Shown in pieces: positions 22,109 through 46,846 of a stretch of DNA of 64,000 bases. Both the position numbers and the translations under genes were made by a program. The notes under the pieces were generated by a model. That model did not search any database. It was not told the origin of the DNA and saw only the letters and a program-made list of their open reading frames with translations. The stretch is from positions 372,001-436,000 of IMG/VR virus record IMGVR_UViG_3300032315_001715. The stretch is one strand, 5' to 3'. Position 1 is the first letter of the stretch. Every line of letters begins with the position of its first letter.

Positions 22109-22202
22109 TGGCGGAGAGCTGTGGTCTTGATCCACATACCAAATATTATTCGGTACCAACTGTTTTCCAAACAGTGCCATCCACCTGGATGGTTAACTCT
22201 CC
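22109..22202 (-). tRNA. tRNA-Ser(GGA), 6-bp D stem
   Basis: loop TT-GGA-AA; CCATCC-AGGT-GGATGG D arm. Confidence 0.85.
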
Positions 22203-22325: not shown

Positions 22326-22411
22326 TGGAGGAGGGTGATGGCATCGAACCATTGACCTTTCGGTCACCACAGTTTTCAAGACTGCGCAAGGAGCCAACCT
22401 TGGCACCCTCC
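22326..22411 (-). tRNA. tRNA-Ser(TGA), 8/4 fold
   Basis: GGAGGGTG/CACCCTCC 8-bp acceptor, 4-bp T stem, loop CT-TGA-AA. Confidence 0.85.
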
Positions 22412-27874: not shown

Positions 27875-28642
27875 TTATAGGAGGCTTATCAGTGTATTAA
27901 TACCCTCAACGGCCGTGTGCGACATGCTAACATCATGTCTACGATTGACCTTGCTCTCATATGGATTGATCCGTATCAACGTTGACGTCCGTTCTTCGGC
28001 GATGTAACGTATGGATGGTATCACCGTGCCGGCACCTATCTCAATACCCAGCACGCTCATCCTGGGTTCCATCCATCTGCGGAAACGATCCTCTCCGAGA
28101 TCTATGTTGGTCCAAACCATGCTTGGATCGCTAAACATCAGAACGTTGGGCCTCAAGGACTGCTGGCACCGAGCGCACCTAGGGATCTCATCGATCGATG
28201 ACAGGGTTGCAGTAAATCTTGGCATCGGTTGCAGTTGTCTCGTGCATGGCTGCTTGCATTGTGCATGCCGTAGATCGCCGTGTATCTCGTAAATGCGAGC
28301 AGGATCATATCCGGCCATGTGGAAATGCCCGTCAACATTGCTGGTCACCACGAAATAATCCTTGCCATGCTGGTTCACGGCATCGAGCAACCTGGTGTAA
28401 CCAGCATGGGGTTTGGTGTGACCATAGGCCAGCATGCGGCTTATGTAAAAATTCCAGGAGGCCAATGGATCGTCGTCAAATCCCCTAGCGGTTGCCAGGG
28501 ATATGAAATCCTCCTTGGCCTTGGTCCACATGCCATTGCTTCCACGGAAATCAGGCAATCCGCTATCAACGCTCATTCCGGCTCCGGCAAGTATGAGGAT
28601 ACCATCTGCTGAATGGAACAAGCTTGAAATGTAATCTTGCAT
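27875..28642 (-). CDS. Sir2/CobB-family NAD-dependent deacylase
   Basis: GAGMSVDSGLPDFRG, TSNVDGHF, EIHG, RPNVLMF. Confidence 0.95.
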   Translation of the reverse strand: MQDYISSLFHSADGILILAGAGMSVDSGLPDFRGSNGMWTKAKEDFISLATARGFDDDPLASWNFYISRMLAYGHTKPHAGYTRLLDAVNQHGKDYFVVTSNVDGHFHMAGYDPARIYEIHGDLRHAQCKQPCTRQLQPMPRFTATLSSIDEIPRCARCQQSLRPNVLMFSDPSMVWTNIDLGEDRFRRWMEPRMSVLGIEIGAGTVIPSIRYIAEERTSTLIRINPYESKVNRRHDVSMSHTAVEGINTLISLL

Positions 28643-28743: not shown

Positions 28744-28913
28744 TGGTGCCGGATGAGGGATTTGAACCCCCGACCTTCGGTTTTTCTTGGACTTGCGGGC
28801 TTTAGGCCTTCTGTCCTTCATGGACGTACACAGAAGTAAATTCTCTGCACGGCTCCTGAGATGTTACCCATCACGGAAACAAAACCGCTGCACTACCACT
28901 GTGCTAACCCGGC
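28744..28913 (-). tRNA. tRNA-Thr(TGT) with ~95-nt anticodon-loop insert (28784-28878)
   Basis: Both halves canonical; removing the insert gives GCGGT-TT-TGT-AA-ACCGA. Confidence 0.85.
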
Positions 28914-28919
28914 ATATCC

Positions 28920-28995
28920 TGGTGGAGCATGTCGGATCTGCCCCGACGGCCTCTGCCATGCCATGACAGCGCTCTCCTAACTGAGCCAATGCCCC
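28920..28995 (-). tRNA. tRNA-Ala(GGC)
   Basis: G3-U70, loop AT-GGC-AT. Confidence 0.88.
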
Positions 28996-31388: not shown

Positions 31389-31506
31389 TGGCTCCTTCTG
31401 CTGGACTCGAACCAGCAACCACCTGATTAATCTTGGACCTGATGGAGTTGCACCATCCAATCTATTGATCCCACAGTCAGGGGCTCTACCATTGAGCTAA
31501 GAAGGA
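31389..31506 (-). tRNA. tRNA-Asn(GTT) with ~43-nt anticodon-loop insert (31430-31472)
   Basis: U1-A72, G73; removing the insert gives CCTGA-CT-GTT-AA-TCAGG. Confidence 0.85.
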
Positions 31507-33221: not shown

Positions 33222-33315
33222 TGGCGGAGAGCAGTGGTCTTGATCCACATGCCGGTTTCTAGCCGGCACCCACTCCTTAGCAGGGAGGGACGAACACTCG
33301 TTCGCTTTACTCTCC
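33222..33315 (-). tRNA. tRNA-Ser(GCT), 6-bp D stem
   Basis: loop CT-GCT-AA, long variable arm. Confidence 0.82.
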
Positions 33316-39562: not shown

Positions 39563-40150
39563 TTAACGAGGAGCAAACGGATCTATTATCACCGGGCAAT
39601 CGCCTCGTTGCATGATGTTTTCATCATGTAGATCAAAATCAATTGCTGAATTGGTACTAACAACATTAGCCAGTAGCTCGATTGCATGTAAGAAATCCGG
39701 CCATTTTTTAATGAAATGCTCGATGTGAGATTTGAGTTTCTCGTCAGTCATGTTGCTGAGATAGTCTCGCCATTTAGGCTCGTCGATGTATCTCAAAAAC
39801 CAATCAGTTGCTATATGATCAGGGTCGGTTCGAACATATTCCCAGGGTGACAGCATTTCTAATCTCAATGCACGGATACCTGGGACCAAAGTAACCGGTA
39901 ATCCTCTAAACTTTGGAAAATGTGGATTATCCTGATGTTTTCGGGCTAGTTCGACAAATTTAGCGTAACCTATATCTGCCTCGTCGTACAGCTTTAGAAC
40001 ATAATTCAAGTTCGGATGTTGCCAAACACTGCCAAATGTGCCGTCTCCCAGCATTTCGAATCCATGCTTGAGAAGCTTTTTCTTCGCGCTGTCTGTGTTT
40101 GTGATGTCTTGTCGCAGGCTATCTGCGCCCACAAGTTCATTGAGTTTCAT
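39563..40150 (-). CDS. protein-kinase-like protein
   Basis: LGDGTFGSVW, VLK, DLHDENIM, IIDP. Confidence 0.85.
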   Translation of the reverse strand: MKLNELVGADSLRQDITNTDSAKKKLLKHGFEMLGDGTFGSVWQHPNLNYVLKLYDEADIGYAKFVELARKHQDNPHFPKFRGLPVTLVPGIRALRLEMLSPWEYVRTDPDHIATDWFLRYIDEPKWRDYLSNMTDEKLKSHIEHFIKKWPDFLHAIELLANVVSTNSAIDFDLHDENIMQRGDCPVIIDPFAPR

Positions 40151-40162
40151 GATGCTATTTAT

Positions 40163-40237
40163 TGGTCAGCGTGGGGAATTTTGCGATCCCGGCCTCCAGG
40201 CTCCCGACCTGGCACTCTTCTCCTGAGCTACACGCTG
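40163..40237 (-). tRNA. tRNA-Pro(GGG)
   Basis: C1-G72, loop TC-GGG-AG. Confidence 0.8.
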
Positions 40238-40244
40238 TTGTAAA

Positions 40245-40319
40245 TGGTCAGGGAGGGGAATTTCGAAATCCCGGCTTCCAGGTTCCAGGCCTGGCACTCT
40301 GCCTCTGAGCTACTCCCTG
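40245..40319 (-). tRNA. tRNA-Pro(TGG)
   Basis: C1-G72, loop CC-TGG-AA. Confidence 0.82.
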
Positions 40320-40326
40320 ATGTTGT

Positions 40327-40403
40327 TAGATGCGGAGGATGGATTCGCACCATCGACCTCTTGGTTATGAGCCAAGCGAGCTACTAGACTGCTCCACTCC
40401 GCA
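40327..40403 (-). tRNA. tRNA-Met(CAT), initiator-like body, no encoded CCA
   Basis: GTGGAGCAG...GTAGCTCG D arm, loop CT-CAT-AA. Confidence 0.8.
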
Positions 40404-40410
40404 ATAAACT

Positions 40411-40487
40411 TGGCGATCCTAGAGGGATTCGAACCCCCATTCTCCGGTTTCGTAGACCAGCGCTCTATCCAGTTGAGCCATAGGATC
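40411..40487 (-). tRNA. tRNA-Arg(ACG)
   Basis: loop CT-ACG-AA. Confidence 0.93.
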
Positions 40488-40494
40488 AAATAAT

Positions 40495-40571
40495 TGGTGG
40501 ACGCGTCTGGATTCGAACCAGATGGGGTAGCGAACCCCGTCGCCATAGCTTGATACCTACCAAGGAAGCCC
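40495..40571 (-). ncRNA. Ala/tmRNA-like element
   Basis: T arm plus TCCACCA, 5' GGG, no canonical D or anticodon arm. Confidence 0.5.
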
Positions 40572-40575
40572 ATAT

Positions 40576-40721
40576 TGGTGGACCCGACGGGAATCGAACC
40601 CGCCTGCATCACGCCCGTGATTGGCTTAGCGTTTTACCCCATGTCCACACCATGTTGTGCGTGGTACTCGATCTCCCAACAGCTTTGAACTGAGAGATTG
40701 GAAGCATGGGCAACGCTAACC
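40576..40721 (-). ncRNA. structured RNA ending in an Ala/tmRNA-like T arm and CCA
   Basis: GCGGG-TTCGATT-CCCGT, GGGTCCACCA; upstream TTAGCGTT/AACGCTAA stem. Confidence 0.55.
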
Positions 40722-40798
40722 TGGCGATCCTGGAGAGATTCGAACTCCCAACCTGCGGCTTCGAAGGCCGACACTCTGTCCAGTTGAGCTACAGGACC
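40722..40798 (-). tRNA. tRNA-Arg(TCG)
   Basis: loop CT-TCG-AA. Confidence 0.9.
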
Positions 40799-40803
40799 AA
40801 TAT

Positions 40804-40879
40804 TGGCGCACATGACGGGAATTGAACCCGCCTAAACCTGTTAGACAGACAGGTGTTCTCACCAGAGAACTACATGTGC
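40804..40879 (-). tRNA. tRNA-Asp(GTC)
   Basis: loop CT-GTC-TA, G73. Confidence 0.88.
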
Positions 40880-40886
40880 ATATCAG

Positions 40887-40962
40887 TGGTGCCGGCGGTT
40901 GGTTCCGCCCCAACTCCTCCTGCTCTTCAGGCAGGCGCTTCTACTAAGTTAGCTTCACCGGC
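40887..40962 (-). tRNA. tRNA-Phe(GAA)
   Basis: loop CT-GAA-GA, atypical T-loop. Confidence 0.85.
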
Positions 40963-40967
40963 AAAAA

Positions 40968-41039
40968 TGGAAGCGGGAGAATGAGTCGAACATTCGTAGG
41001 AAAGTTTATGAGACTTTCTGGACACCGTGTCTTCCCGCT
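40968..41039 (-). tRNA. tRNA(CAT), minimal D arm
   Basis: AAAGT-CT-CAT-AA-ACTTT. Confidence 0.7.
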
Positions 41040-41046
41040 GTAAACT

Positions 41047-41137
41047 TGGTGTGTAAGGTGGGATTCGAACCCTTCGCCCAGCGCGCGTTTTACAGCATCA
41101 GGGTTACTGCCATCCAGCTGCTGCTGGAGCCTCACAC
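41047..41137 (-). ncRNA. tRNA-like RNA (Tyr-like, unpaired anticodon arm)
   Basis: Acceptor, TTCGAAT loop and ACCA; contains CTGTAAA. Confidence 0.55.
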
Positions 41138-41149
41138 ATAAAACTAAAT

Positions 41150-41248
41150 TGGCTCTTTGTGATGGGTGCTGCCCCCACGTTGTCTGGGCCCTTGCATGGG
41201 ACCTCTCCATACCTACCGGGTCGCGAACGCCAGCGATACACACAAAGA
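41150..41248 (-). ncRNA. tRNA-like RNA with branched central domain
   Basis: TCTTTGTG/CACAAAGA acceptor plus GCCA. Confidence 0.6.
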
Positions 41249-41255
41249 TCAAAAC

Positions 41256-41329
41256 TGGTACCGGCTGCAGGTAACGCTCCTGCCTCGAACATCGTTATGA
41301 GCAATGTCGGGTCGCTTGACCAAACCGGC
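41256..41329 (-). tRNA. tRNA(CAT), minimal D arm
   Basis: loop CT-CAT-AA. Confidence 0.72.
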
Positions 41330-41470
41330 TTAGCAACAACGTGGCCCAACAGAACTACACCGTCTGGGGGTGCCTCTTGGAGGACTCTATGTCCTTGCAT
41401 TTTTTGCCATGTCATGCCAGCGTTCTGCGCCTTATCGTTGCCGCTGCGTATGCATGCTCTATGGCTTATT

Positions 41471-41546
41471 TGGGGTGACCGACGGGTACTGCCCCCGCTT
41501 GGATGGTTTCACAGACCACCGTCCATACTTACTGACTCCGGCCACC
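41471..41546 (-). tRNA. tRNA-His(GTG) with encoded G-1:C73
   Basis: loop CT-GTG-AA. Confidence 0.88.
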
Positions 41547-41688
41547 ATGTTAATGTACCCTGCCCGGGCTGTACCCAACAATAGGTGGGGCCTTGGCTTC
41601 TCGGTGCTAGGGTTATTTGTTTTCCTTGACCACGCTGGCCATTGGCCTTTCCCTACTTTTGTCATATCGGTAGTGGTTCTAAGGAACT

Positions 41689-41762
41689 TGGTTGGCCTGG
41701 ATGGGATTGAACCATCATCGGTCGATTATCGGTCGACTGCTCTACCATTGAGCTACAAGCCA
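41689..41762 (-). tRNA. tRNA-Ile(GAT)
   Basis: loop CC-GAT-AA. Confidence 0.88.
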
Positions 41763-41766
41763 GCAT

Positions 41767-41838
41767 TGGTTACGATTGGCGCTCACCGACCTAACCCGGG
41801 TTCACAGCCCAGCGAAGCGATGCGGCACTCTAATCGCA
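41767..41838 (-). tRNA. atypical tRNA-His(GTG)-like, A73, no G-1
   Basis: CTGGG-CT-GTG-AA-CCCGG; weak D and T arms. Confidence 0.45.
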
Positions 41839-41841
41839 TAT

Positions 41842-41929
41842 TGGCAGAAGTGACAGGGTTCGAACCTGCTCAGGCGTTAGCTCACTGGTTTTGGAGACCA
41901 GCCCGTCTCTCCATCTACGGCGCACTTCC
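41842..41929 (-). tRNA. tRNA-Trp(CCA) with long variable region
   Basis: loop CT-CCA-AA, G73. Confidence 0.85.
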
Positions 41930-41937
41930 ATAAAACT

Positions 41938-42009
41938 TGGTGGGATGCGGTGGAGTTTAACCACCCTCGACACTGCTACCAGTGCTCAGCCACCCGGCTG
42001 TTCCATCCC
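41938..42009 (-). ncRNA. tRNA-like RNA with GTAG tetraloop in place of an anticodon loop
   Basis: GCACTG-GTAG-CAGTGT; acceptor plus ACCA. Confidence 0.6.
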
Positions 42010-42015
42010 ATAAAC

Positions 42016-42106
42016 TGGTGGAGGGCTTTGGAGTCGAACCAAACAATGTGTTTTGCCGTAAACATTCATGGCTGGATGATGCCCGCACCACGCGAGCAAG
42101 CCCTCC
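42016..42106 (-). ncRNA. Tyr-like tRNA body with non-canonical anticodon arm
   Basis: GGAGGGC/GCCCTCC, perfect T arm, TCAT-CCAGCC-ATGA. Confidence 0.65.
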
Positions 42107-42112
42107 GTAAAT

Positions 42113-42188
42113 TGGTGGAGCATGTCGGTTCTGCCCCGACTACCTCCGCATTGCAAATGCGGCGCTCTCCTGATTGAGCTAATGCCCC
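42113..42188 (-). tRNA. tRNA-Ala(TGC)
   Basis: G3-U70, loop TT-TGC-AA. Confidence 0.88.
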
Positions 42189-42196
42189 AGTTAACC

Positions 42197-42294
42197 TGGC
42201 ACCGGATCATGGATTCGAACCATGCAAGCGACTGTCCGTACTTCATCTGAGTCGCGCGCTTTTTGGATTGGGTTCACCAGCTCCCTCATCCGGT
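42197..42294 (-). ncRNA. tRNA-like RNA with enlarged anticodon domain
   Basis: ACCGGAT/ATCCGGT, CATGG-TTCGAAT-CCATG, GCGACT/AGTCGC with 16-nt loop. Confidence 0.65.
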
Positions 42295-42303
42295 ATGTTA
42301 TTT

Positions 42304-42399
42304 TGGTGCATCGCCCGATGTCCGACTCGGCTCTTCCAACAACACCTTGCCTAGGCAACGTCGTTGGACGTTTTATCCGCTACTAAACTAGCCCGATGC
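42304..42399 (-). ncRNA. tRNA-like RNA with extended (~14 bp) anticodon stem
   Basis: TCCAACGACGTTGC-CTAG-GCAAGGTGTTGTTGGA. Confidence 0.65.
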
Positions 42400-42412
42400 A
42401 TATACAATATAT

Positions 42413-42497
42413 TGGTGGGAGTGGTAGGATTCGAACCTACTCACCCAAAGGAACGGATTTACAGTCCGCCGCCGCTCTCCAACTCAGCCGCACTCCC
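42413..42497 (-). tRNA. tRNA-Tyr(GTA), first tRNA of the array
   Basis: loop CT-GTA-AA, A73. Confidence 0.93.
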
Positions 42498-42734
42498 ATG
42501 AAACCATCTGCGAAACAGCGCAACACGCTGCTTGGCGGATGGTTCCTAACTCGGGGGTGTTGCGCTTACATAACGCAACACCCCGTCATTTCTTCTTACA
42601 TGCCGGGACCTAAGTGGATGCTTGGCCCAGTTGCGCCGTGGTTCCTGTGCCGCGATGCGGACAGTCAGCACGAAACTCCTGGAGTTCCAAACGATCCGCA
42701 TGGTTTCCCAGCAACTTATCGTTTCCTGATTCGA

Positions 42735-42747
42735 TTTTTAAACAGCA
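42735..42747 (-). promoter_or_regulatory. boxA-like antitermination site
   Basis: TGCTGTTTAAAAA versus rrn boxA TGCTCTTTAACAA. Confidence 0.55.
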
Positions 42748-42763
42748 CAACTTTGAAAACAAT

Positions 42764-42794
42764 AAAAAACCCCGGTAAGCTGTTGCTTCCGGGG
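42764..42794 (-). terminator. attenuator terminator
   Basis: CCCCGGAAGC-AACA-GCTTACCGGGG-TTTTTT. Confidence 0.9.
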
Positions 42795-42840
42795 CCTGTC
42801 CACTTGTTTTGATCCAATGATCAATCTAGGTGGCAGACCC
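42792..42840 (-). promoter_or_regulatory. antiterminator hairpin
   Basis: GGGTCTGCCAC (last leader codons) pairs with GTGGACAGGCCC, which overlaps the terminator 5' arm; inner TTGATC/GATCAA hairpin. Confidence 0.8.
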
Positions 42841-42903
42841 TCGTGTATCAGGCTTTTGGGCCCAATGGCTAAACAGTTCGACGCGATAATTCATTGTAAT
42901 CAT
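42826..42903 (-). CDS. attenuator leader peptide MITMNYRVELFSHWAQKPDTRGSAT
   Basis: 25 codons, 19 different amino acids, stop at the edge of the antiterminator 5' strand. Confidence 0.85.
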   Translation of the reverse strand: MITMNYRVELFSHWAQKPDTRGSAT

Positions 42904-42939
42904 TGTTGAAGAGAAAATCCTTTTTGTCTCGTGCAGTTA

Positions 42940-42967
42940 TTTATACACGCTTTATTTAGCGTGTCAA
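42940..42967 (-). promoter_or_regulatory. promoter of the leader/tRNA array
   Basis: TTGACA-N16-TATAAA, overlapping a TATAAATA late-type box. Confidence 0.75.
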
Positions 42968-43092
42968 CCACTTTCTGCCGTTGAATTGGTATTATTTCAA
43001 CCTTTTCCGTGCAAAGCGTGATCAACTCCGCCGTGCCATGTGTTTACAACGGTATGGCAAAGCTGTCAACCGTGTTTTTTGGCGTTTGATCG

Positions 43093-43296
43093 TTAGCAAC
43101 GATAGTAGCAGCGTCCACCGTAATATGGACGTGGTGCATAATAGGACCGAGGTGCGTAATAGGGCCGAGGTGCCACATAAACTGGCGGCCTATGGACGAT
43201 CACCGGTGCAGGCGCCACATAGTACGGATCGGCCGGATAAACCGCACATCCGGGGAGGGCAACGATCAAGCATGCTGCTAACAGGAACTTTTTCAT
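43093..43296 (-). CDS. small Pro/Tyr-rich lipoprotein
   Basis: Lipobox LPGC, YYAPR repeats. Confidence 0.7.
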   Translation of the reverse strand: MKKFLLAACLIVALPGCAVYPADPYYVAPAPVIVHRPPVYVAPRPYYAPRSYYAPRPYYGGRCYYRC

Positions 43297-43304
43297 GCAA
43301 TTAT

Positions 43305-43574
43305 TTACCGACACACGCGATACGATACATATTGTTTCAGATAGTGGTCGTATCTGTTTTCCCAATAGCACGTTGGACGATACCGATGTGGTTCATAATG
43401 GTATCTCGGCGGGGCATAATATCGCGGAGGCTCGTGATATCTATGTTGATAGTGGTGATGATGGGGACGATCGTATCGCCGACGGTGATCATGATATTGG
43501 GCAGCGGCATCCGCCGTTCCCAATCCTAGAGTGATCACCGTTGCTGTGATCAGCAGCTTGCCCAAACGGTTCAT
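43305..43574 (-). CDS. small secreted His/Tyr/Arg-rich protein
   Basis: Signal peptide, C-terminal CYW...RVCR. Confidence 0.7.
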   Translation of the reverse strand: MNRLGKLLITATVITLGLGTADAAAQYHDHRRRYDRPHHHHYQHRYHEPPRYYAPPRYHYEPHRYRPTCYWENRYDHYLKQYVSYRVCR

Positions 43575-43616: not shown

Positions 43617-44156
43617 TTATAGCATCGTCGACGGATTGGTCAAGCCGATTTCTTGCAATATTCGTGTCACGGCCCATTCACCGCCGACGACGGTCTTGAA
43701 CGGTATGTCACGTGCGTCCAACAGGGCTGCGACCTTTTGATCATAGATCTCGGCTGCTTCTAGATCCTTTTGATTTCGCCCAATGGGATTGTACTCAAAA
43801 TTCCGCTGCAAGAGGAAGTTATGATTTTCAAAGGAGTCAAACACCTCCATGACGAGATCACGAAAGTTGTTGCTCAGGGAGCCTTCCCTGAGATATACCA
43901 ATCCAAGTGCAATTGGGCTATCGGTAATGACCCAGTCTATGCGGTGATCGCGAAGCCTGGAAATCCGGCGTTGCTGCTTGGCAAAGATATAGATCTGATC
44001 CTCGAGGATGTTGTGCCGACCTTCCCATACCATGTCCTTGGCGTATTCGGTAACCAGCTCAACTTCCAGCCGCATTTTTTTCATTTCATAGAACAAACCA
44101 GCCGCCGTGGTGCTCTTACCAGCGCCGGGACCGCCGAACAAATTGATTACCTGCAT
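43617..44156 (-). CDS. AAA_28/NadR-like P-loop kinase
   Basis: INLFGGPGAGKST, EYAKD, ITDSP. Confidence 0.88.
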   Translation of the reverse strand: MQVINLFGGPGAGKSTTAAGLFYEMKKMRLEVELVTEYAKDMVWEGRHNILEDQIYIFAKQQRRISRLRDHRIDWVITDSPIALGLVYLREGSLSNNFRDLVMEVFDSFENHNFLLQRNFEYNPIGRNQKDLEAAEIYDQKVAALLDARDIPFKTVVGGEWAVTRILQEIGLTNPSTML

Positions 44157-44181
44157 GGTATTCTCCCCTGAGAATTGTGTT

Positions 44182-44982
44182 TTACAAGCGGCGTTCAAGC
44201 TCTGCCGCAACACTAGCGGCTAGATCAGCGTCATACCCATCCTTGTCCTCGTTGAGGGCATCCATGTTCTCCATGGCCCACATGTAGTAATCCGTTTCAA
44301 TTTCGGACAACAGCTTGCCACGATTCTTGCCAAATGGCCATGTTACCACGATCAACGGTTTCCAACACAAGGCATGTATCTGCTCACCTAGATCCGGGCC
44401 CTCGGTAACCTGGTTGGTAGCAAGGGCGTAGTCAACCAGGAACTCAAAAAGCAAGGCACATGTTATGGTATCGGCTCCCGCCCTGTGGGCACCTAGCTCG
44501 TCGGGAACCGGCAGATCAAGCTTGTAGCGAAGATAGCTGAGATTATATTGTAAATCAGGGAAATCAACGTTGAGAAGCTGCTTGCTTAGCCGGTGCGTGC
44601 AAATCCACTTGGATCTGTCAGCGGCAATCTCAGCATCCTCGATTGAACCTGCGTTGGCCCATGCATACATCAGCACGTCTTGATCGTACTTGCAGTTGTG
44701 GGCTACCAAATATGGTTGCGTCCACCCGAGGATATGCTTGGCCTGATCTGGTGCATCGAGCATGGTTGGCAAACCCTCGATCATTCGATTGCTGATGTGA
44801 TTCTTGGCGGATGCTTCCGGAGGTATGCCGTTTTCGGCGCCGAACAACATGTCAGAAACCTGCCATCTCTGCCCGTCGTAGCGAGCCCCGGCGATTTCAA
44901 CTATTTCTGCTTGTGCTGGGTGTAGATTTGTGGTTTCGGTATCAAGCACCGATACGGTGCTGAGAAATGTGTCTCTGTTCAT
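44182..44982 (-). CDS. DEDDh 3'-5' exonuclease (ExoX-like)
   Basis: VLDTETT, VAHNCKYD, AHRAGAD, PFGKNRG. Confidence 0.92.
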   Translation of the reverse strand: MNRDTFLSTVSVLDTETTNLHPAQAEIVEIAGARYDGQRWQVSDMLFGAENGIPPEASAKNHISNRMIEGLPTMLDAPDQAKHILGWTQPYLVAHNCKYDQDVLMYAWANAGSIEDAEIAADRSKWICTHRLSKQLLNVDFPDLQYNLSYLRYKLDLPVPDELGAHRAGADTITCALLFEFLVDYALATNQVTEGPDLGEQIHALCWKPLIVVTWPFGKNRGKLLSEIETDYYMWAMENMDALNEDKDGYDADLAASVAAELERRL

Positions 44983-45490: not shown

Positions 45491-46846
45491 ATGAGCATTT
45501 ACAACTATCCTGTCACTGGATTACCTGGTCCAACTGGTATCACGGGTGCGATCGGTCCAACCGGAAATACCGGACCAACCGGAAATACTGGACCAAGTGG
45601 CATCAGCTTCACCGGGCCTACCGGTGCAACTGGCGCCGATTCCACGATAACCGGGCCTACCGGTGCAACCGGTGATTCTTTCACCGGACCAACCGGCGCG
45701 ACCGGATCTGATTCAATGGTAACCGGTCCTACCGGCGCGACGGTTACTGGTCCCACGGGAGAACGCGGTCCAACCGGTGCGACCGGCCGAGCTAGCACGG
45801 TTGCTGGTCCCAGCGGTCCGACCGGACAGCGAGGTTTCACCGGCCCGATCGGGCTGCGTGGTGCAACAGGTCCGTCGGGCGTAACGGGTTCGACCGGACC
45901 ATTTGGTGAGGGCAGCACGGGTCCGCAGGGTGAGGTTGGTCCAGAAGGACCGACGGGTCCCAGCGGTGCAGGCAGCACGGGACCTTCGGGTGCCACCGGA
46001 CCAGCTGGGGGTCCTACTGGATCCCCAGGATCGACCGGTACTACCGGACCGACAGGTCGAGCAGGTACCAGTTTCACCGGTCCAACAGGTTCACAGGGCA
46101 CCATTGGAGCACAGGGACCAACCGGTGCGACCGGTGCCCAGGGAGTGCAGGGCCTGACCGGGTCACCATCGACCACACCAGGACCAACCGGTCCGCAAGG
46201 ATCGCAGGGCAATGCCGGTGCAACAGGACCAACTGGGGCAAGTGGTGCTACTGGTCCGCAGGGATTGATCGGAAATACCGGTCCACAGGGTGTGCAAGGC
46301 CCACAGGGCAATGTTGGTGCCACGGGCGCTATCGGTACAACAGGTGCCACGGGCGCTACCGGTACAACCGGACCGCAGGGTGTGCAGGGGTCACAAGGCA
46401 ATCTAGGATCAACCGGGACCACGGGTGCTACCGGTGCTACCGGTGCTACCGGCCCAACAGGGCTGCTAGGATCAACAGGTCCACGGGGGTCACAGGGTAA
46501 TCTAGGTGCCACTGGATCAACCGGATCGACCGGGCCAACCGGCGTGTCAAGCTATCCAACATCTAGATCCCAGGTAACCACATCGACATGGAATGCGGTG
46601 ATCACCGATCAATACCTCGGCGTGACCTACTCTGGTAACGTAACCATTAATCTTCCCACGGGAGTTGATCAAAAGGGATTGATAATCAAGGATGAAAACG
46701 GGTCTGCTAACAGCAATCCCATCACCTTGGTGCCGAACGGTTCCCAGACCATTGACGGTCAATCGTCGGTCAGCATTAACAACAGCCACGGTGCCGCAAC
46801 GTTATGGTTCCACAGCGGTGTTTGGCATGTGATAAGCAAGGCATGA
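45491..46846 (+). CDS. collagen-like fibre protein
   Basis: About 350 aa of G-X-T/Q repeats plus C-terminal globular domain. Confidence 0.9.

What the first reader, a model, noticed from the sequence alone, without database searches (positions are those of the whole stretch)
41047..42399. Cluster of tRNA mimics with intact acceptor/T arms but rewired anticodon domains just downstream of the attenuator
At least six elements (41047, 41150, 41938, 42016, 42197, 42304) keep paired acceptor stems, T arms and encoded CCA. Their anticodon arms are replaced by a tetraloop, a 6-nt or 16-nt loop, a ~14-bp stem or a branched domain. New well-paired stems argue against random decay. Inference: processed but non-decoding RNAs acting as decoys for anticodon nucleases, synthetases or RelA, induced when translation is attacked.
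Basis: partly seen in the sequence, partly recalled or inferred. Interest (0 to 1): 0.75.

Follow-up and report, generated by a model that had tools for sequence, protein, structure and literature searches.

The report
Anticodon-less tRNA look-alikes in a phage tRNA array
A giant freshwater phage carries, among its roughly 45 tRNA genes, several tRNA-shaped RNA genes that cannot read codons; at least two are kept by natural selection, so they are probably working RNAs of unknown job, not dead tRNA genes.

Summary
The six elements are real. All lie on the minus strand, in tRNA phase, at the start of a 36-kb tRNA array of a 453-kb T4/cyanophage-like jumbo phage. Each ends in NCCA and has a 6-9 bp acceptor stem. 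None reaches the Rfam tRNA threshold.

They are heterogeneous:
- **E3 (42106-42016)** is an 8/4 allo-tRNA/tRNA-Ser-like cloverleaf. Its anticodon arm is a 6-bp stem capped by a GNNA tetraloop in relatives. It is 91-96% identical across a phage clade, as conserved as the best true tRNAs there.
- **E4 (42009-41938)** is a mini-cloverleaf with tetraloop-capped D and anticodon arms. A lake variant keeps all 22 pairs through 15 substitutions, including two compensatory pairs.
- **E6** keeps a 7-nt loop (C33) in an allo-tRNA shape.
- **E1, E2 and E5** are lineage-specific. E2 and E5 have central domains no more stable than shuffled sequence. E1's T arm is degenerate.

Expression could not be tested because no RNA run was listed.

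Best reading: these are co-transcribed, tRNA-processed, non-decoding tRNA-body mimics, analogous to T4 RNAC/RNAD and irregular allo-tRNA polycistrons. Decoy roles for anticodon nucleases or RelA are unlikely, since the anticodon loop is missing. The "attenuator" hairpin has no U-tract.

The parts
42304..42399 (-). E1: 96-nt tRNA-like unit. It has a 6-bp acceptor plus a G.G mismatch, discriminator A and CCA, and a 4-bp D arm. The central arm is about 14 bp (10 bp, a 2-nt bulge, 4 bp, loop CUAG). The T arm is degenerate (4 bp, 8-nt loop).
   Evidence: Central-domain z = -3.2. Absent from L098 and the X9 variant; present with indels in X2 and X3.
42197..42294 (-). E2: 98-nt tRNA-like unit. It has a 7/7 acceptor (A1-U72), discriminator G and CCA, a canonical T arm (CAUGG UUCGAAU CCAUG), and a D arm with GG. 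The central part is a 6-bp stem with a 16-nt loop after a 14-nt unpaired linker.
   Evidence: Central-domain z = +0.4, not better than shuffles. Absent from L098 and X9.
42016..42106 (-). E3: 91-nt conserved anticodon-less 8/4 (allo-tRNA / tRNA-Ser-like) cloverleaf. It has an 8-bp acceptor, a 7-bp D stem with a 5-nt loop, and a 6-bp central stem with a GNNA tetraloop (C.A mismatch in this copy). It also has a short variable hairpin and a 4-bp T stem with loop UUCGACU, then ACCA.
   Evidence: ARAGORN calls it 'Trp cca'. Rfam tRNA-Sec scores 32.7 bits, below the gathering score of 47. Alignment A1 and RNAalifold. 91-96% identity to relatives. Found in 13 loci, about 12 distinct contigs. The E3 model's best non-self hits are the phage's tRNA-Ser genes.
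41938..42009 (-). E4: 72-nt mini-cloverleaf. It has a 6-bp acceptor plus G.G, a D arm of 5 bp with tetraloop GGGU, and a central arm of 6 bp with tetraloop GUAG. The T arm is 5 bp with loop UUAAACU, then ACCA.
   Evidence: The lake variant X9 keeps all stems with compensatory changes at 29:36 and 47:59. In L098, L099, L100 and L104 this slot holds a different structured element.
41150..41248 (-). E5: 99-nt unit with an 8-bp acceptor and a 5-bp T stem whose loop is non-canonical (GGCAGCA), then G-CCA. The central domain is poorly defined (a possible 6-bp stem with 7-nt loop AGAGGUC).
   Evidence: Central-domain z = +0.5. Almost no coverage in related metagenome contigs.
41047..41137 (-). E6: 91-nt allo-tRNA-like (8/3-4) cloverleaf. 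It has an 8-bp acceptor, a 6-bp D stem with tetraloop AGCA, and a 6-bp anticodon stem with 7-nt loop ACCCUGA (C33). It also has a weak variable arm and a T stem GGG/CCC with loop UUCGAAU, then ACCA.
   Evidence: Same architecture as the 8/4 tRNA-Ser-like units at 22202-22109 and 33315-33222. No relatives were recovered.
41767..41838 (-).
   Evidence: Carries a 5-nt deletion in the X2 and X9 variants.
40495..40616 (-). Extra 122-nt tRNA-like RNA outside the flagged span: 7-bp acceptor, canonical T arm, ACCA, and a central domain of three or four hairpins.
   Evidence: Conserved in L098, L099, L104 and L106; 10 of 31 pairs show compensatory changes.
41842..42497 (-). Decoding tRNAs interleaved with E1-E4: Tyr(GUA) 42497-42413, Ala(UGC) 42188-42113 (T loop GGCAGAA), and Trp(CCA) 41929-41842 (long variable arm).
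42554..42584 (-).
   Evidence: The stem covaries in L098, L100, L106 and L109. Relatives have TTGACA-N18-TATAAT immediately upstream. Not called a terminator.
42764..42796 (-). Intrinsic terminator-like hairpin with a U-tract that ends the upstream small-protein genes, conserved in relatives.

Best explanation
The six elements are genuine tRNA-shaped, non-decoding RNA genes. They sit in the first 1.5 kb of the phage's minus-strand tRNA operon.

Each keeps what bacterial RNase P and 3' trimming need: a roughly 12-bp acceptor/T coaxial helix, an encoded NCCA, and short AU-rich spacers. They should therefore be cut out of the polycistronic precursor like tRNAs and accumulate as stable 70-100-nt RNAs (inferred).

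They cannot read codons. The anticodon loop is replaced by a tetraloop-capped stem (E3, E4), a long hairpin (E1) or an oversized loop (E2). In E6 the loop lacks U33.

The set is mixed:
- E3 is a conserved derivative of the phage's 8-bp-acceptor tRNA-Ser lineage.
- E4 is an accessory cloverleaf whose stems are held by selection.
- E1, E2, E5 and E6 are lineage-specific cassettes. Some of them may be decaying.

Most likely mode of action (inferred): they mimic the tRNA body. They would engage proteins that recognise the acceptor/T/elbow and CCA end without reading the anticodon. Candidates are processing and CCA-repair enzymes, anticodon-independent synthetases such as SerRS for E3, or host effectors that attack the acceptor end. 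They would act as competing ligands or as charged non-decoding carriers, and they would be immune to anticodon-loop nucleases.

My confidence that E3 and E4 are functional non-decoding RNAs is about 0.75. My confidence in the mimic/sponge mechanism is about 0.3.
For: - Geometry, phasing and CCA of all six.
- Signature enrichment: 47 observed against 0.18 expected.
- None passes the tRNA model.
- E3 is present in 13 related loci, about 12 distinct contigs. It is 91-96% identical where Trp is 90-93%, Ile 87%, His 74% and Ala 59%.
- The E3 consensus fold is 8/4 with a tetraloop-capped central stem. Loop positions 36 and 37 vary freely, and A41G restores a pair in every relative.
- The E3 model hits the phage's tRNA-Ser genes next best: 33.4 and 28.5 bits.
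- E4 has 15 substitutions and 2 loop insertions in the X9 variant with 0 broken pairs and 2 compensatory pairs.
- A further 122-nt tRNA-like RNA has 10 covarying pairs.
- Cassette-like gain and loss between close relatives in a region full of homing endonucleases.
- The phage also carries two CCA-adding-type nucleotidyltransferases and an Rnl1-type ligase, so it invests in tRNA-end and anticodon-loop repair.
- Precedents: T4 RNAC/RNAD of unknown function (PMC9697503), and irregular allo-tRNA polycistrons, some charged but not used in translation (PMC5389517).
Against: - There are no expression, processing or charging data.
- Comparative support exists only for E3 and E4.
- E3's stems are almost invariant, so they give no covariation (0 compensatory pairs). 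Three relatives carry a U2.C71 mismatch in the acceptor.
- E4 rests on one reconstructed variant.
- E2 and E5 central domains fold no better than shuffles.
- E1 and E2 are dispensable in relatives.
- No partner protein was identified. No Ro/TROVE gene is present.
Confidence: 0.4

Rival explanations
1. These are decaying tRNA pseudogenes or neutral debris of a fast-turnover array shuffled by homing endonucleases. Acceptor, T arm and CCA persist only because they are still needed as RNase P and 3'-end cutting signals, so that neighbouring tRNAs are released correctly (tRNA punctuation). The central domains drift freely.
For: - E2 and E5 central domains are no more stable than shuffles.
- E1's T arm is degenerate.
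- E1 and E2 are absent from L098 and X9. E5 and E6 are hardly seen in relatives. E4's slot holds another element in relatives.
- The array contains many homing-endonuclease genes.
- In the Anabaena trn operon, 3 of 26 genes behave as pseudogenes (PMC8421152).
Against: - E3 is as conserved as the best true tRNAs, including its loops.
- E4 keeps all pairs through 15 substitutions, P about 9e-5.
- Tetraloop-capped 6-bp stems recur in unrelated elements: E3, E4 and 40646-40576.
- The elements abut other tRNAs directly, so no extra punctuation is needed there.
Confidence: 0.3
2. Some of them are irregular but decoding tRNAs of the allo-tRNA kind. E6 would read with CCU from loop ACCCUGA, and E5 from loop AGAGGUC. 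They would act as missense or otherwise unusual decoders.
For: - E6 has the full 8/4 allo-tRNA architecture with a 6-bp stem and 7-nt loop, like the 8/4 tRNA-Ser-like units at 22202-22109 (GGA) and 33315-33222 (GCU).
- 8/4 tRNA-Ser and tRNA-His are reported in phage tRNA clusters, and allo-tRNAs have diverse anticodons (PMC5389517).
Against: - E6 has C33 instead of the near-universal U33, only a 3-bp T stem and a weak variable arm.
- E5's loop lacks U33 and a purine at 37.
- This cannot apply to E1-E4.
- The window's long ORFs give no sign of recoding.
Confidence: 0.1
3. One reading: decoys for anticodon nucleases, synthetases or RelA, switched on by an upstream attenuator when translation is attacked.
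For: - The phage carries tRNA-repair functions (Rnl1-type ligase, CCA-adding-type enzymes). This suggests pressure from tRNA-targeting defences.
- There is a conserved hairpin upstream of the array.
Against: - Known anticodon nucleases recognise the anticodon loop, and RelA needs codon-paired tRNA (established knowledge). These RNAs lack that loop.
- The hairpin has no U-tract and is not called a terminator.
- Its loop AUG is not conserved: it is AGG in L109.
- No leader ORF was found.
Confidence: 0.07
4. They are intron-containing tRNAs whose expanded anticodon domains are removed by splicing to give normal tRNAs.
For: - The same phage clade does carry insertions in anticodon loops: window 31506-31389 and 28913-28744, and tRNA-Tyr of L098, L104 and L100.
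- ARAGORN at a low threshold joins E1 and E2 into one 'tRNA-Phe' with a 117-nt intron.
Against: - Those insertions share a signature: they follow UGU of a GUN anticodon and end in ..UCCAAGAWW. E1-E6 lack it.
- Removing any single segment from E1-E5 does not leave a 5-bp stem with a 7-nt loop containing U33.
- The ARAGORN join needs a 6/7 acceptor and appears only at -ps80.
Confidence: 0.03

Closest known systems
Phage T4 stable RNAs RNAC and RNAD (species 1 and 2), encoded next to the T4 tRNA cluster
   Same: Small non-coding RNAs of a T4-like phage, encoded with its tRNA genes. Function is still unknown (PMC9697503). The tRNA region is associated with homing endonucleases such as SegB (PMC8421152).
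   Different: No sequence relation was tested, and none appeared among the listed phage hits. Here there are at least six to nine units with encoded CCA and clear cloverleaf geometry. Two have comparative support. T4 RNAC and RNAD are classed as late RNAs, whereas relatives of this array have a sigma-70-type promoter.
allo-tRNAs / (8/4) tRNA-Ser and polycistrons of irregular tRNAs (Mukai et al. 2017, PMC5389517)
   Same: E3 and E6 have the 12-bp acceptor branch split 8/4, a 6-7-bp D stem with a 4-5-nt loop, and an extra arm. 8/4 tRNA-Ser genes occur in phage tRNA clusters. Some irregular members are charged but not used in translation.
   Different: E3 has no anticodon loop at all: it has a tetraloop-capped stem. 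E6 has C33. These are conserved in a jumbo-phage clade rather than in Acidobacteria or next to toxin-antitoxin loci. Charging is untested.
Viral and cellular tRNA-like small RNAs processed by RNase P/Z (mascRNA, MHV68 vtRNAs, YrlA)
   Same: Cloverleaf-like RNAs with acceptor and T arms but a reduced or replaced anticodon arm. They are made by the tRNA-processing machinery and do not decode (my knowledge; Rfam families RF01684 and RF02553).
   Different: No Rfam match to these families lies over E1-E6; the only such matches are weak (20 bits or less, far under their cut-offs) and lie over true tRNAs at 40726-40859. Those are eukaryotic or Ro-associated, and this phage has no TROVE gene. Here the CCA is encoded.
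tRNA pseudogenes in long tRNA arrays (the Anabaena trn operon L-array)
   Same: A long array with encoded CCA, an associated homing endonuclease, and a few members that are not detected as tRNAs (PMC8421152).
   Different: E3 and E4 show purifying selection on sequence or structure. This array is viral and much larger. No TrcR-type or translational-stress control is evident.

Membership tests
Canonical elongator tRNA (Rfam RF00005) | Covariance-model score at or above the gathering threshold (29 bits) | tested here: not met
   None of E1-E6 appears among the 42 matches at gathering score. At E<=10 only E3 appears, as tRNA-Sec at 32.7 bits against a threshold of 47.
Canonical elongator tRNA (Rfam RF00005) | 5-bp anticodon stem with a 7-nt loop carrying U33 and a purine at 37 | tested here: not met
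   E4 has a tetraloop. E3 has a tetraloop in relatives and a 6-nt loop here. E2 has a 16-nt loop. E1 has a 14-bp hairpin. E5's loop is AGAGGUC. E6's loop is ACCCUGA with C33.
Canonical elongator tRNA (Rfam RF00005) | 7-bp acceptor plus 5-bp T stem, UUCRANY T loop, and a 3' NCCA | tested here: inconclusive
   Met by E2, and by E3 in its 7/5 register. E4 has a 6-bp acceptor plus a mismatch and loop UUAAACU. E5 is 8/5 with loop GGCAGCA. E6 is 8/3-4. E1 is 6/4 with a degenerate loop. All six have NCCA.
allo-tRNA / (8/4) tRNA-Ser | 12-bp acceptor branch split 8/4 or 9/3 | tested here: met
   E3: RNAalifold gives an 8-bp acceptor and a 4-bp T stem, and the single-sequence MFE gives 9/3. E6: 8 bp plus 3-4 bp.
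allo-tRNA / (8/4) tRNA-Ser | Long variable arm and a functional 7-nt anticodon loop | tested here: not met
   E3 has a 3-5-bp variable hairpin, and its central arm ends in a tetraloop. E6 has a weak 3-bp variable arm and a 7-nt loop with C33.
allo-tRNA / (8/4) tRNA-Ser | Relatedness to bona fide 8-bp-acceptor tRNA-Ser genes | tested here: met
   The best non-self hits of the E3 model in the window are tRNA-Ser(UGA) 22411-22326 at 33.4 bits and the 8/4 Ser(GGA)-like unit 22202-22109 at 28.5 bits. The first six acceptor pairs are shared.
allo-tRNA / (8/4) tRNA-Ser | Aminoacylation by SerRS | not testable with these tools
   Needs an in vitro charging assay or an acid-gel Northern.
T4 RNAC/RNAD-type stable RNAs of a phage tRNA cluster | Encoded in or next to the tRNA cluster, on the same strand, with no ORF | tested here: met
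   The units lie in tRNA phase on the minus strand. Overlapping ORFs have no Pfam match.
T4 RNAC/RNAD-type stable RNAs of a phage tRNA cluster | Accumulate as discrete stable RNAs during infection | not testable with these tools
   No RNA run was listed for this sequence.
T4 RNAC/RNAD-type stable RNAs of a phage tRNA cluster | Sequence homology to T4 rnaC or rnaD | not tested
   A distant blastn against GenBank phages listed only matches over the true tRNAs (Tyr, Ala, Ile) among the 40 rows shown. No direct comparison with T4 was made.
Intron-containing tRNA | Removing one insertion restores a standard anticodon stem-loop | tested here: not met
   By inspection of E1-E6. The clade's real anticodon-loop insertions have a signature (they follow UGU and end in UCCAAGAWW) that these six lack.
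Transcription attenuator upstream of the array | Terminator hairpin followed by a U-tract, plus an alternative structure or leader ORF | tested here: not met
   The hairpin at 42584-42554 has no U-tract and is not called a terminator. The loop AUG is not conserved.

The most novel reading that the evidence does not exclude
E3 is a new class of viral tRNA mimic: an anticodon-less derivative of an 8/4 tRNA-Ser, conserved across a clade of freshwater jumbo phages. It would be matured and possibly serylated like a tRNA but could never enter decoding.

Together with swappable accessory cloverleaves (E4, E1, E2, and the 122-nt RNA at 40616-40495), it would form a phage RNA arsenal. That arsenal would titrate or feed host factors that recognise the tRNA body and CCA end, for example acceptor-end-modifying or acceptor-end-cleaving defence toxins. 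Capping the anticodon arm with a tetraloop would make the RNAs immune to anticodon nucleases.
Probability: 0.2. Interest if true: 0.85.

Novelty: new variant of a known kind. Interest (0 to 1): 0.6.

Why it matters
Phage tRNA clusters are usually read as codon-usage or anti-nuclease spare parts. The non-tRNA RNAs encoded beside the T4 tRNA genes (RNAC, RNAD) still have no known function (PMC9697503).

This array offers a tractable case. It holds several tRNA-shaped RNAs that cannot decode. One is as conserved as real tRNAs and is traceable to an 8/4 tRNA-Ser ancestor. Another has its stems kept by compensatory change. All sit in a cassette-like, fast-turnover region.

If they are matured and bind or are charged by tRNA enzymes, they would be RNA-level mimics in the phage-host conflict over tRNAs. 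They would also be natural examples of minimal tRNA bodies for RNase P, CCA-enzyme and synthetase recognition.

The case also shows that standard tRNA finders both miss real tRNAs here (His at 41546-41471, and the 8/4 Ser-like units) and mislabel mimics (E3 called as Trp).

Tried and rejected
- **Neighbouring proteins.** I looked for relatives through the AAA_28 protein (43617-44213) and the ORF at 39563-40150. These gave only the identical twin contig or distant phages with no adjacent array.
- **The 960-aa structural protein.** It gave 80 related loci. The 92%-identical contigs hold no tRNAs. One 67% relative (G008) has a 26-tRNA array of ordinary tRNAs plus an amber suppressor, with no homologs of the six.
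- **GenBank phages.** Only true tRNAs matched.
- **Pattern scans.** The E4 pattern in IMG/VR found only the twin contig. The E3 21-mer in bacterial and archaeal genomes found nothing.
- **RNA sequencing runs.** None was listed, so expression, ends and charging are untested.
- **Read laying.** It printed only part of the variant list, so the E1 and E2 variants in runs X2 and X3 could not be reconstructed.
- **Paralogs.** No paralogs of E1-E6 exist elsewhere in the 453-kb genome.
- **Whole-element and central-domain folding z-scores.** They do not separate real tRNAs from mimics.
- **ARAGORN's low-threshold 'tRNA-Phe with 117-nt intron'.** This call joins E1 and E2. I rejected it because it needs a 6/7 acceptor and appears only at -ps80.
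- **Coding potential.** ORFs overlapping the region have no Pfam match.
- **Ro/Y-RNA-type explanation.** No TROVE gene is present.
Full report
**Context**

The window is bases 372001-436000 of a 452,799-bp IMG/VR virus record. Its structural proteins are about 41% identical to those of T4-like cyanophages. The sequence recurs in freshwater lake metagenomes.

Between 6.8 and 42.5 kb the minus strand carries a very large tRNA array. ARAGORN finds 40 genes there, and Rfam finds 42 matches at gathering score. The array is interspersed with homing-endonuclease-like genes (GIY-YIG/NUMOD3, endonuclease I-like, HNH). It also holds auxiliary genes: dual-specificity phosphatases, radical SAM enzymes, methyltransferases and SIR2.

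The flagged span is the 5' end of this operon. It lies just after a terminator (42796-42764) and a conserved leader hairpin (42584-42554).

**The observation**

The six coordinates are the CCA ends of minus-strand units. I call them E1 (42399-42304), E2 (42294-42197), E3 (42106-42016), E4 (42009-41938), E5 (41248-41150) and E6 (41137-41047).

They are packed in tRNA phase. The order is Tyr, 13 nt, E1, 9 nt, E2, 8 nt, Ala, 6 nt, E3, 6 nt, E4, 8 nt, Trp. Further on it is Met, 7 nt, E5, 12 nt, E6, 7 nt, Met. The spacers are AU-rich. All six end in N-CCA.

A strict signature (7/7 acceptor, 5/5 T stem, NCCA, 62-128 nt) occurs 47 times on the array strand. Shuffles give 0.18, and the rest of the genome gives about one per 37 kb per strand. 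Chance is therefore excluded.

None of the six reaches the Rfam tRNA threshold. Only E3 gives any clan match at E<=10: tRNA-Sec at 32.7 bits against a threshold of 47. ARAGORN labels E3 'tRNA-Trp (cca)', which the fold does not support.

**Anatomy of each element**

| Element | Acceptor / T arm | Central (anticodon) domain |
|---|---|---|
| E4 | 6 bp plus G.G / 5 bp, loop UUAAACU | Clean mini-cloverleaf. D arm is 5 bp with a tetraloop; central arm is 6 bp with a tetraloop |
| E3 | 8 bp / 4 bp, canonical T loop | 7-bp D stem, 6-bp central stem, short variable hairpin |
| E6 | 8 bp / 3-4 bp | 6-bp D stem with a tetraloop; genuine 6-bp stem with 7-nt loop ACCCUGA (C33, not U33) |
| E5 | 8 bp / 5 bp, loop GGCAGCA | Ill-defined |
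| E2 | 7/7 / canonical T arm | Normal D arm, then a 14-nt linker and a 6-bp stem with a 16-nt loop |
| E1 | 6 bp / degenerate | About 14-bp hairpin |

In relatives, E3's central stem is capped by GNNA (GCCA, GGUA or GGCA).

E6 has the same 8/4 plan as two unannotated tRNA-Ser-like units in this window: 22202-22109 (anticodon GGA) and 33315-33222 (GCU).

Central-domain folding energies beat shuffles only for E1 (z -3.2) and E4 (z -2.5). Real tRNAs from the array score between +1.2 and -2.6, so this test has little power.

**Comparative evidence**

No RNA run was listed, so I used DNA variation.

Laying contigs from four lake metagenome runs on 40200-43000 showed relatives at roughly 90-95% identity, with striking cassette turnover:
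- One variant (X9) replaces 42123-42411 (Ala, E2 and E1) with 77 nt.
- Another (X3) replaces 41820-42015 (Trp and E4) with 266 nt.
- E5 and E6 are barely covered.

For E4, the X9 variant differs by 15 substitutions and two 1-nt insertions:
- All 22 base pairs survive.
- 29:36 changes from U-A to C-G.
- 47:59 changes from U-A to C-G.
- One G-C becomes G-U.
- Every other change lies in a loop or junction.
- Random placement of 15 substitutions leaves all pairs intact in 9e-5 of trials.

In that variant the T loop is the canonical UUCGAUC. The central loop is 5 nt (GGGAA), so it is still not an anticodon loop.

A 22-mer from E3 recovered one more IMG/VR contig and 11 JGI metagenome loci (one of them the same contig). 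In these, E3 is always 91 nt. Its first 35 nt are invariant except G2 (U in three relatives). It is 91-96% identical to the window copy. In the same comparisons Trp is 90-93%, Ile 87%, His 74%, the 122-nt element 72-73% and Ala about 59%. A nearby protein gene is about 71% identical at the DNA level.

Because E3's stems hardly vary, it shows no compensatory pairs. The support for E3 is conservation, free variation at tetraloop positions 36 and 37, and A41G restoring a pair in every relative.

A covariance model of E3 finds the phage's own 8-bp-acceptor tRNA-Ser genes as its next-best hits, at 33.4 and 28.5 bits. The first six acceptor pairs are shared. E3 is therefore best read as an anticodon-less descendant of that lineage.

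E1 and E2 are absent from L098, where Tyr is followed directly by Ala and then E3. In L098, L099, L100 and L104, E4's slot holds an unrelated structured element of about 70 nt without CCA.

Outside the flagged span, a 122-nt tRNA-like RNA (40616-40495) is conserved in four relatives. Ten of its 31 pairs show compensatory change. Conserved tRNA-shaped non-tRNAs are therefore a theme of this clade.

**Interpretation**

- **Shown:** real, phased, tRNA-shaped genes that cannot decode; selection on E3 (sequence) and E4 (structure); rapid gain and loss of the others.
- **Inferred:** maturation by RNase P and 3' trimming, because the acceptor/T minihelix and encoded CCA are the known substrate determinants.

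I favour a role as tRNA-body mimics for partners that do not read the anticodon. E3 keeps a Ser-type acceptor, and SerRS does not read the anticodon (established knowledge), so charging is conceivable.

The phage also encodes two CCA-adding-type nucleotidyltransferases and an Rnl1-type ligase. This fits a conflict over tRNA ends and loops. It encodes no Ro/TROVE protein.

The 'attenuator' has no U-tract, its loop AUG is not conserved, and relatives carry TTGACA-N18-TATAAT immediately upstream. It looks like the 5' hairpin of the primary transcript.

For E2, E5 and perhaps E1, decay of former tRNAs that are kept only as processing signals remains a fair alternative. E6 could be an odd decoding allo-tRNA.

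**Comparison with known systems**

- **T4 RNAC/RNAD** are stable RNAs encoded by phage T4 (beside its tRNA cluster, from my knowledge), and their function is still unknown (PMC9697503).
- **8/4 tRNA-Ser and tRNA-His in phage clusters, and polycistrons of irregular allo-tRNA-like sequences**, some charged but not used in translation (PMC5389517).
- **tRNA-like small RNAs** such as mascRNA, MHV68 vtRNAs and YrlA. No Rfam match to these families lies over E1-E6; the only such matches are weak, far under their cut-offs, and lie over true tRNAs.
- **Pseudogenes in long bacterial tRNA arrays** (PMC8421152).

E3 meets the 8/4 geometry of allo-tRNAs but fails the anticodon-loop criterion, so I do not file it as an allo-tRNA. 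The set is a new variant of a known kind.

**Verdict**

Interest is 0.6.

Noticed in passing
window 31389-31506 (-) and 28744-28913 (-); L098:7274-7430 (-); L104, L108 and L109 tRNA-Tyr; L100 tRNA-Tyr: tRNAs of the GUN-anticodon family carry insertions inside the anticodon loop, right after U33-G34-U35: Asn GUU here (118 nt), a GUA tRNA here (170 nt), and Tyr GUA in relatives (156-157 nt). The insertions are 43-95 nt long. Two of the three shown (window 31506-31389 and Tyr of L098/L104) start with GGGAUC, all three end in ..UCCAAGAWW, and they fold as a hairpin. In L100 the Tyr insertion is long and holds an ORF with an RBS and NUMOD-like motifs. At 43-95 nt they are shorter than any group I intron I know of (my knowledge). 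Whether and how they are removed is unknown.
   Followed up: partly
window 41471-41546 (-): A tRNA-His(GUG) with G-1:C73 and a non-canonical T loop (GGCAGUA) is missed by both ARAGORN and Rfam. A 74%-identical homolog in L100 keeps the CUGUGAA loop with a fully covarying anticodon stem.
   Followed up: partly
window 42113-42188, 28920-28995, 40887-40962, 41150-41248 (-); L098, L100, L104: Several tRNAs and tRNA-likes share non-canonical T loops of the form GGCRGNA in place of UUCRANY. Examples are Ala(UGC) with G3:U70, loops GGCAGAA and GGCAGAU. The feature is also conserved in relatives. It implies an altered elbow.
   Followed up: no
window 22109-22202 (-), 33222-33315 (-), 22326-22411 (-): There are 8/4 (allo-tRNA-type) tRNA-Ser-like genes with anticodons GGA and GCU that neither ARAGORN nor Rfam reports. 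tRNA-Ser(UGA) scores as tRNA-Sec in Rfam (52.2 bits) because of its 8-bp acceptor.
   Followed up: partly
window 40495-40616 (-), overlapping 40576-40646 (-): A 122-nt tRNA-like RNA is conserved with 10 covarying pairs. Its 5' part overlaps a 71-nt tRNA-like unit whose anticodon arm is a 5-bp stem with tetraloop GGGC. The two folds exclude each other. There are weak Rfam tmRNA-type matches here.
   Followed up: partly
window 41842-41929 (-): tRNA-Trp(CCA) has a 15-nt variable region (88 nt in all). It is conserved at 90-93% in relatives. This is unusual for a Trp tRNA.
   Followed up: no
window 42554-42584 (-): The leader hairpin before the first tRNA is conserved, with a covarying 11-12-bp stem and loop UUAUGUAAG (UUAGGUAAG in L109), and no U-tract. 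Relatives have a consensus TTGACA-N18-TATAAT just upstream. The window copy has lost both hexamers.
   Followed up: partly
G000:C1:111695-112033 (-); 321051-321206 (+); 125898-126263 and 186499-186861 (+); 264791-265201 (-): Outside the window the phage encodes a permuted tmRNA, two adjacent tRNA(CUA) amber-suppressor-type genes, two PolyA_pol/CCA-adding-type nucleotidyltransferases and an Rnl1-type RNA ligase. Relatives G008 and L002 also carry tRNA(CUA).
   Followed up: no
L098:6994-7075 (-), L104:5421-5497 (-), L099, L100, L106: In relatives, the slot that holds E4 in the window is filled by a different element of about 70 nt. It has a 7-8-bp closing stem and two hairpins, no CCA, and 4 pairs with compensatory change.
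   Followed up: partly
window 40622-40719 (-): A 98-nt unit has a 7/7 terminal stem plus G-CCA and a 10-bp internal hairpin. It has the strongest folding z-score of the region (-3.07). It overlaps the next unit by 25 nt.
   Followed up: no
window 43093-43574 (-); 45491-46846 (+); 27875-28642 (-): Two small signal-peptide or lipoprotein-like ORFs rich in Y/P/R/H repeats sit just upstream of the array. There is also a 451-aa collagen-repeat protein, and a SIR2-family protein inside the array.
   Followed up: no
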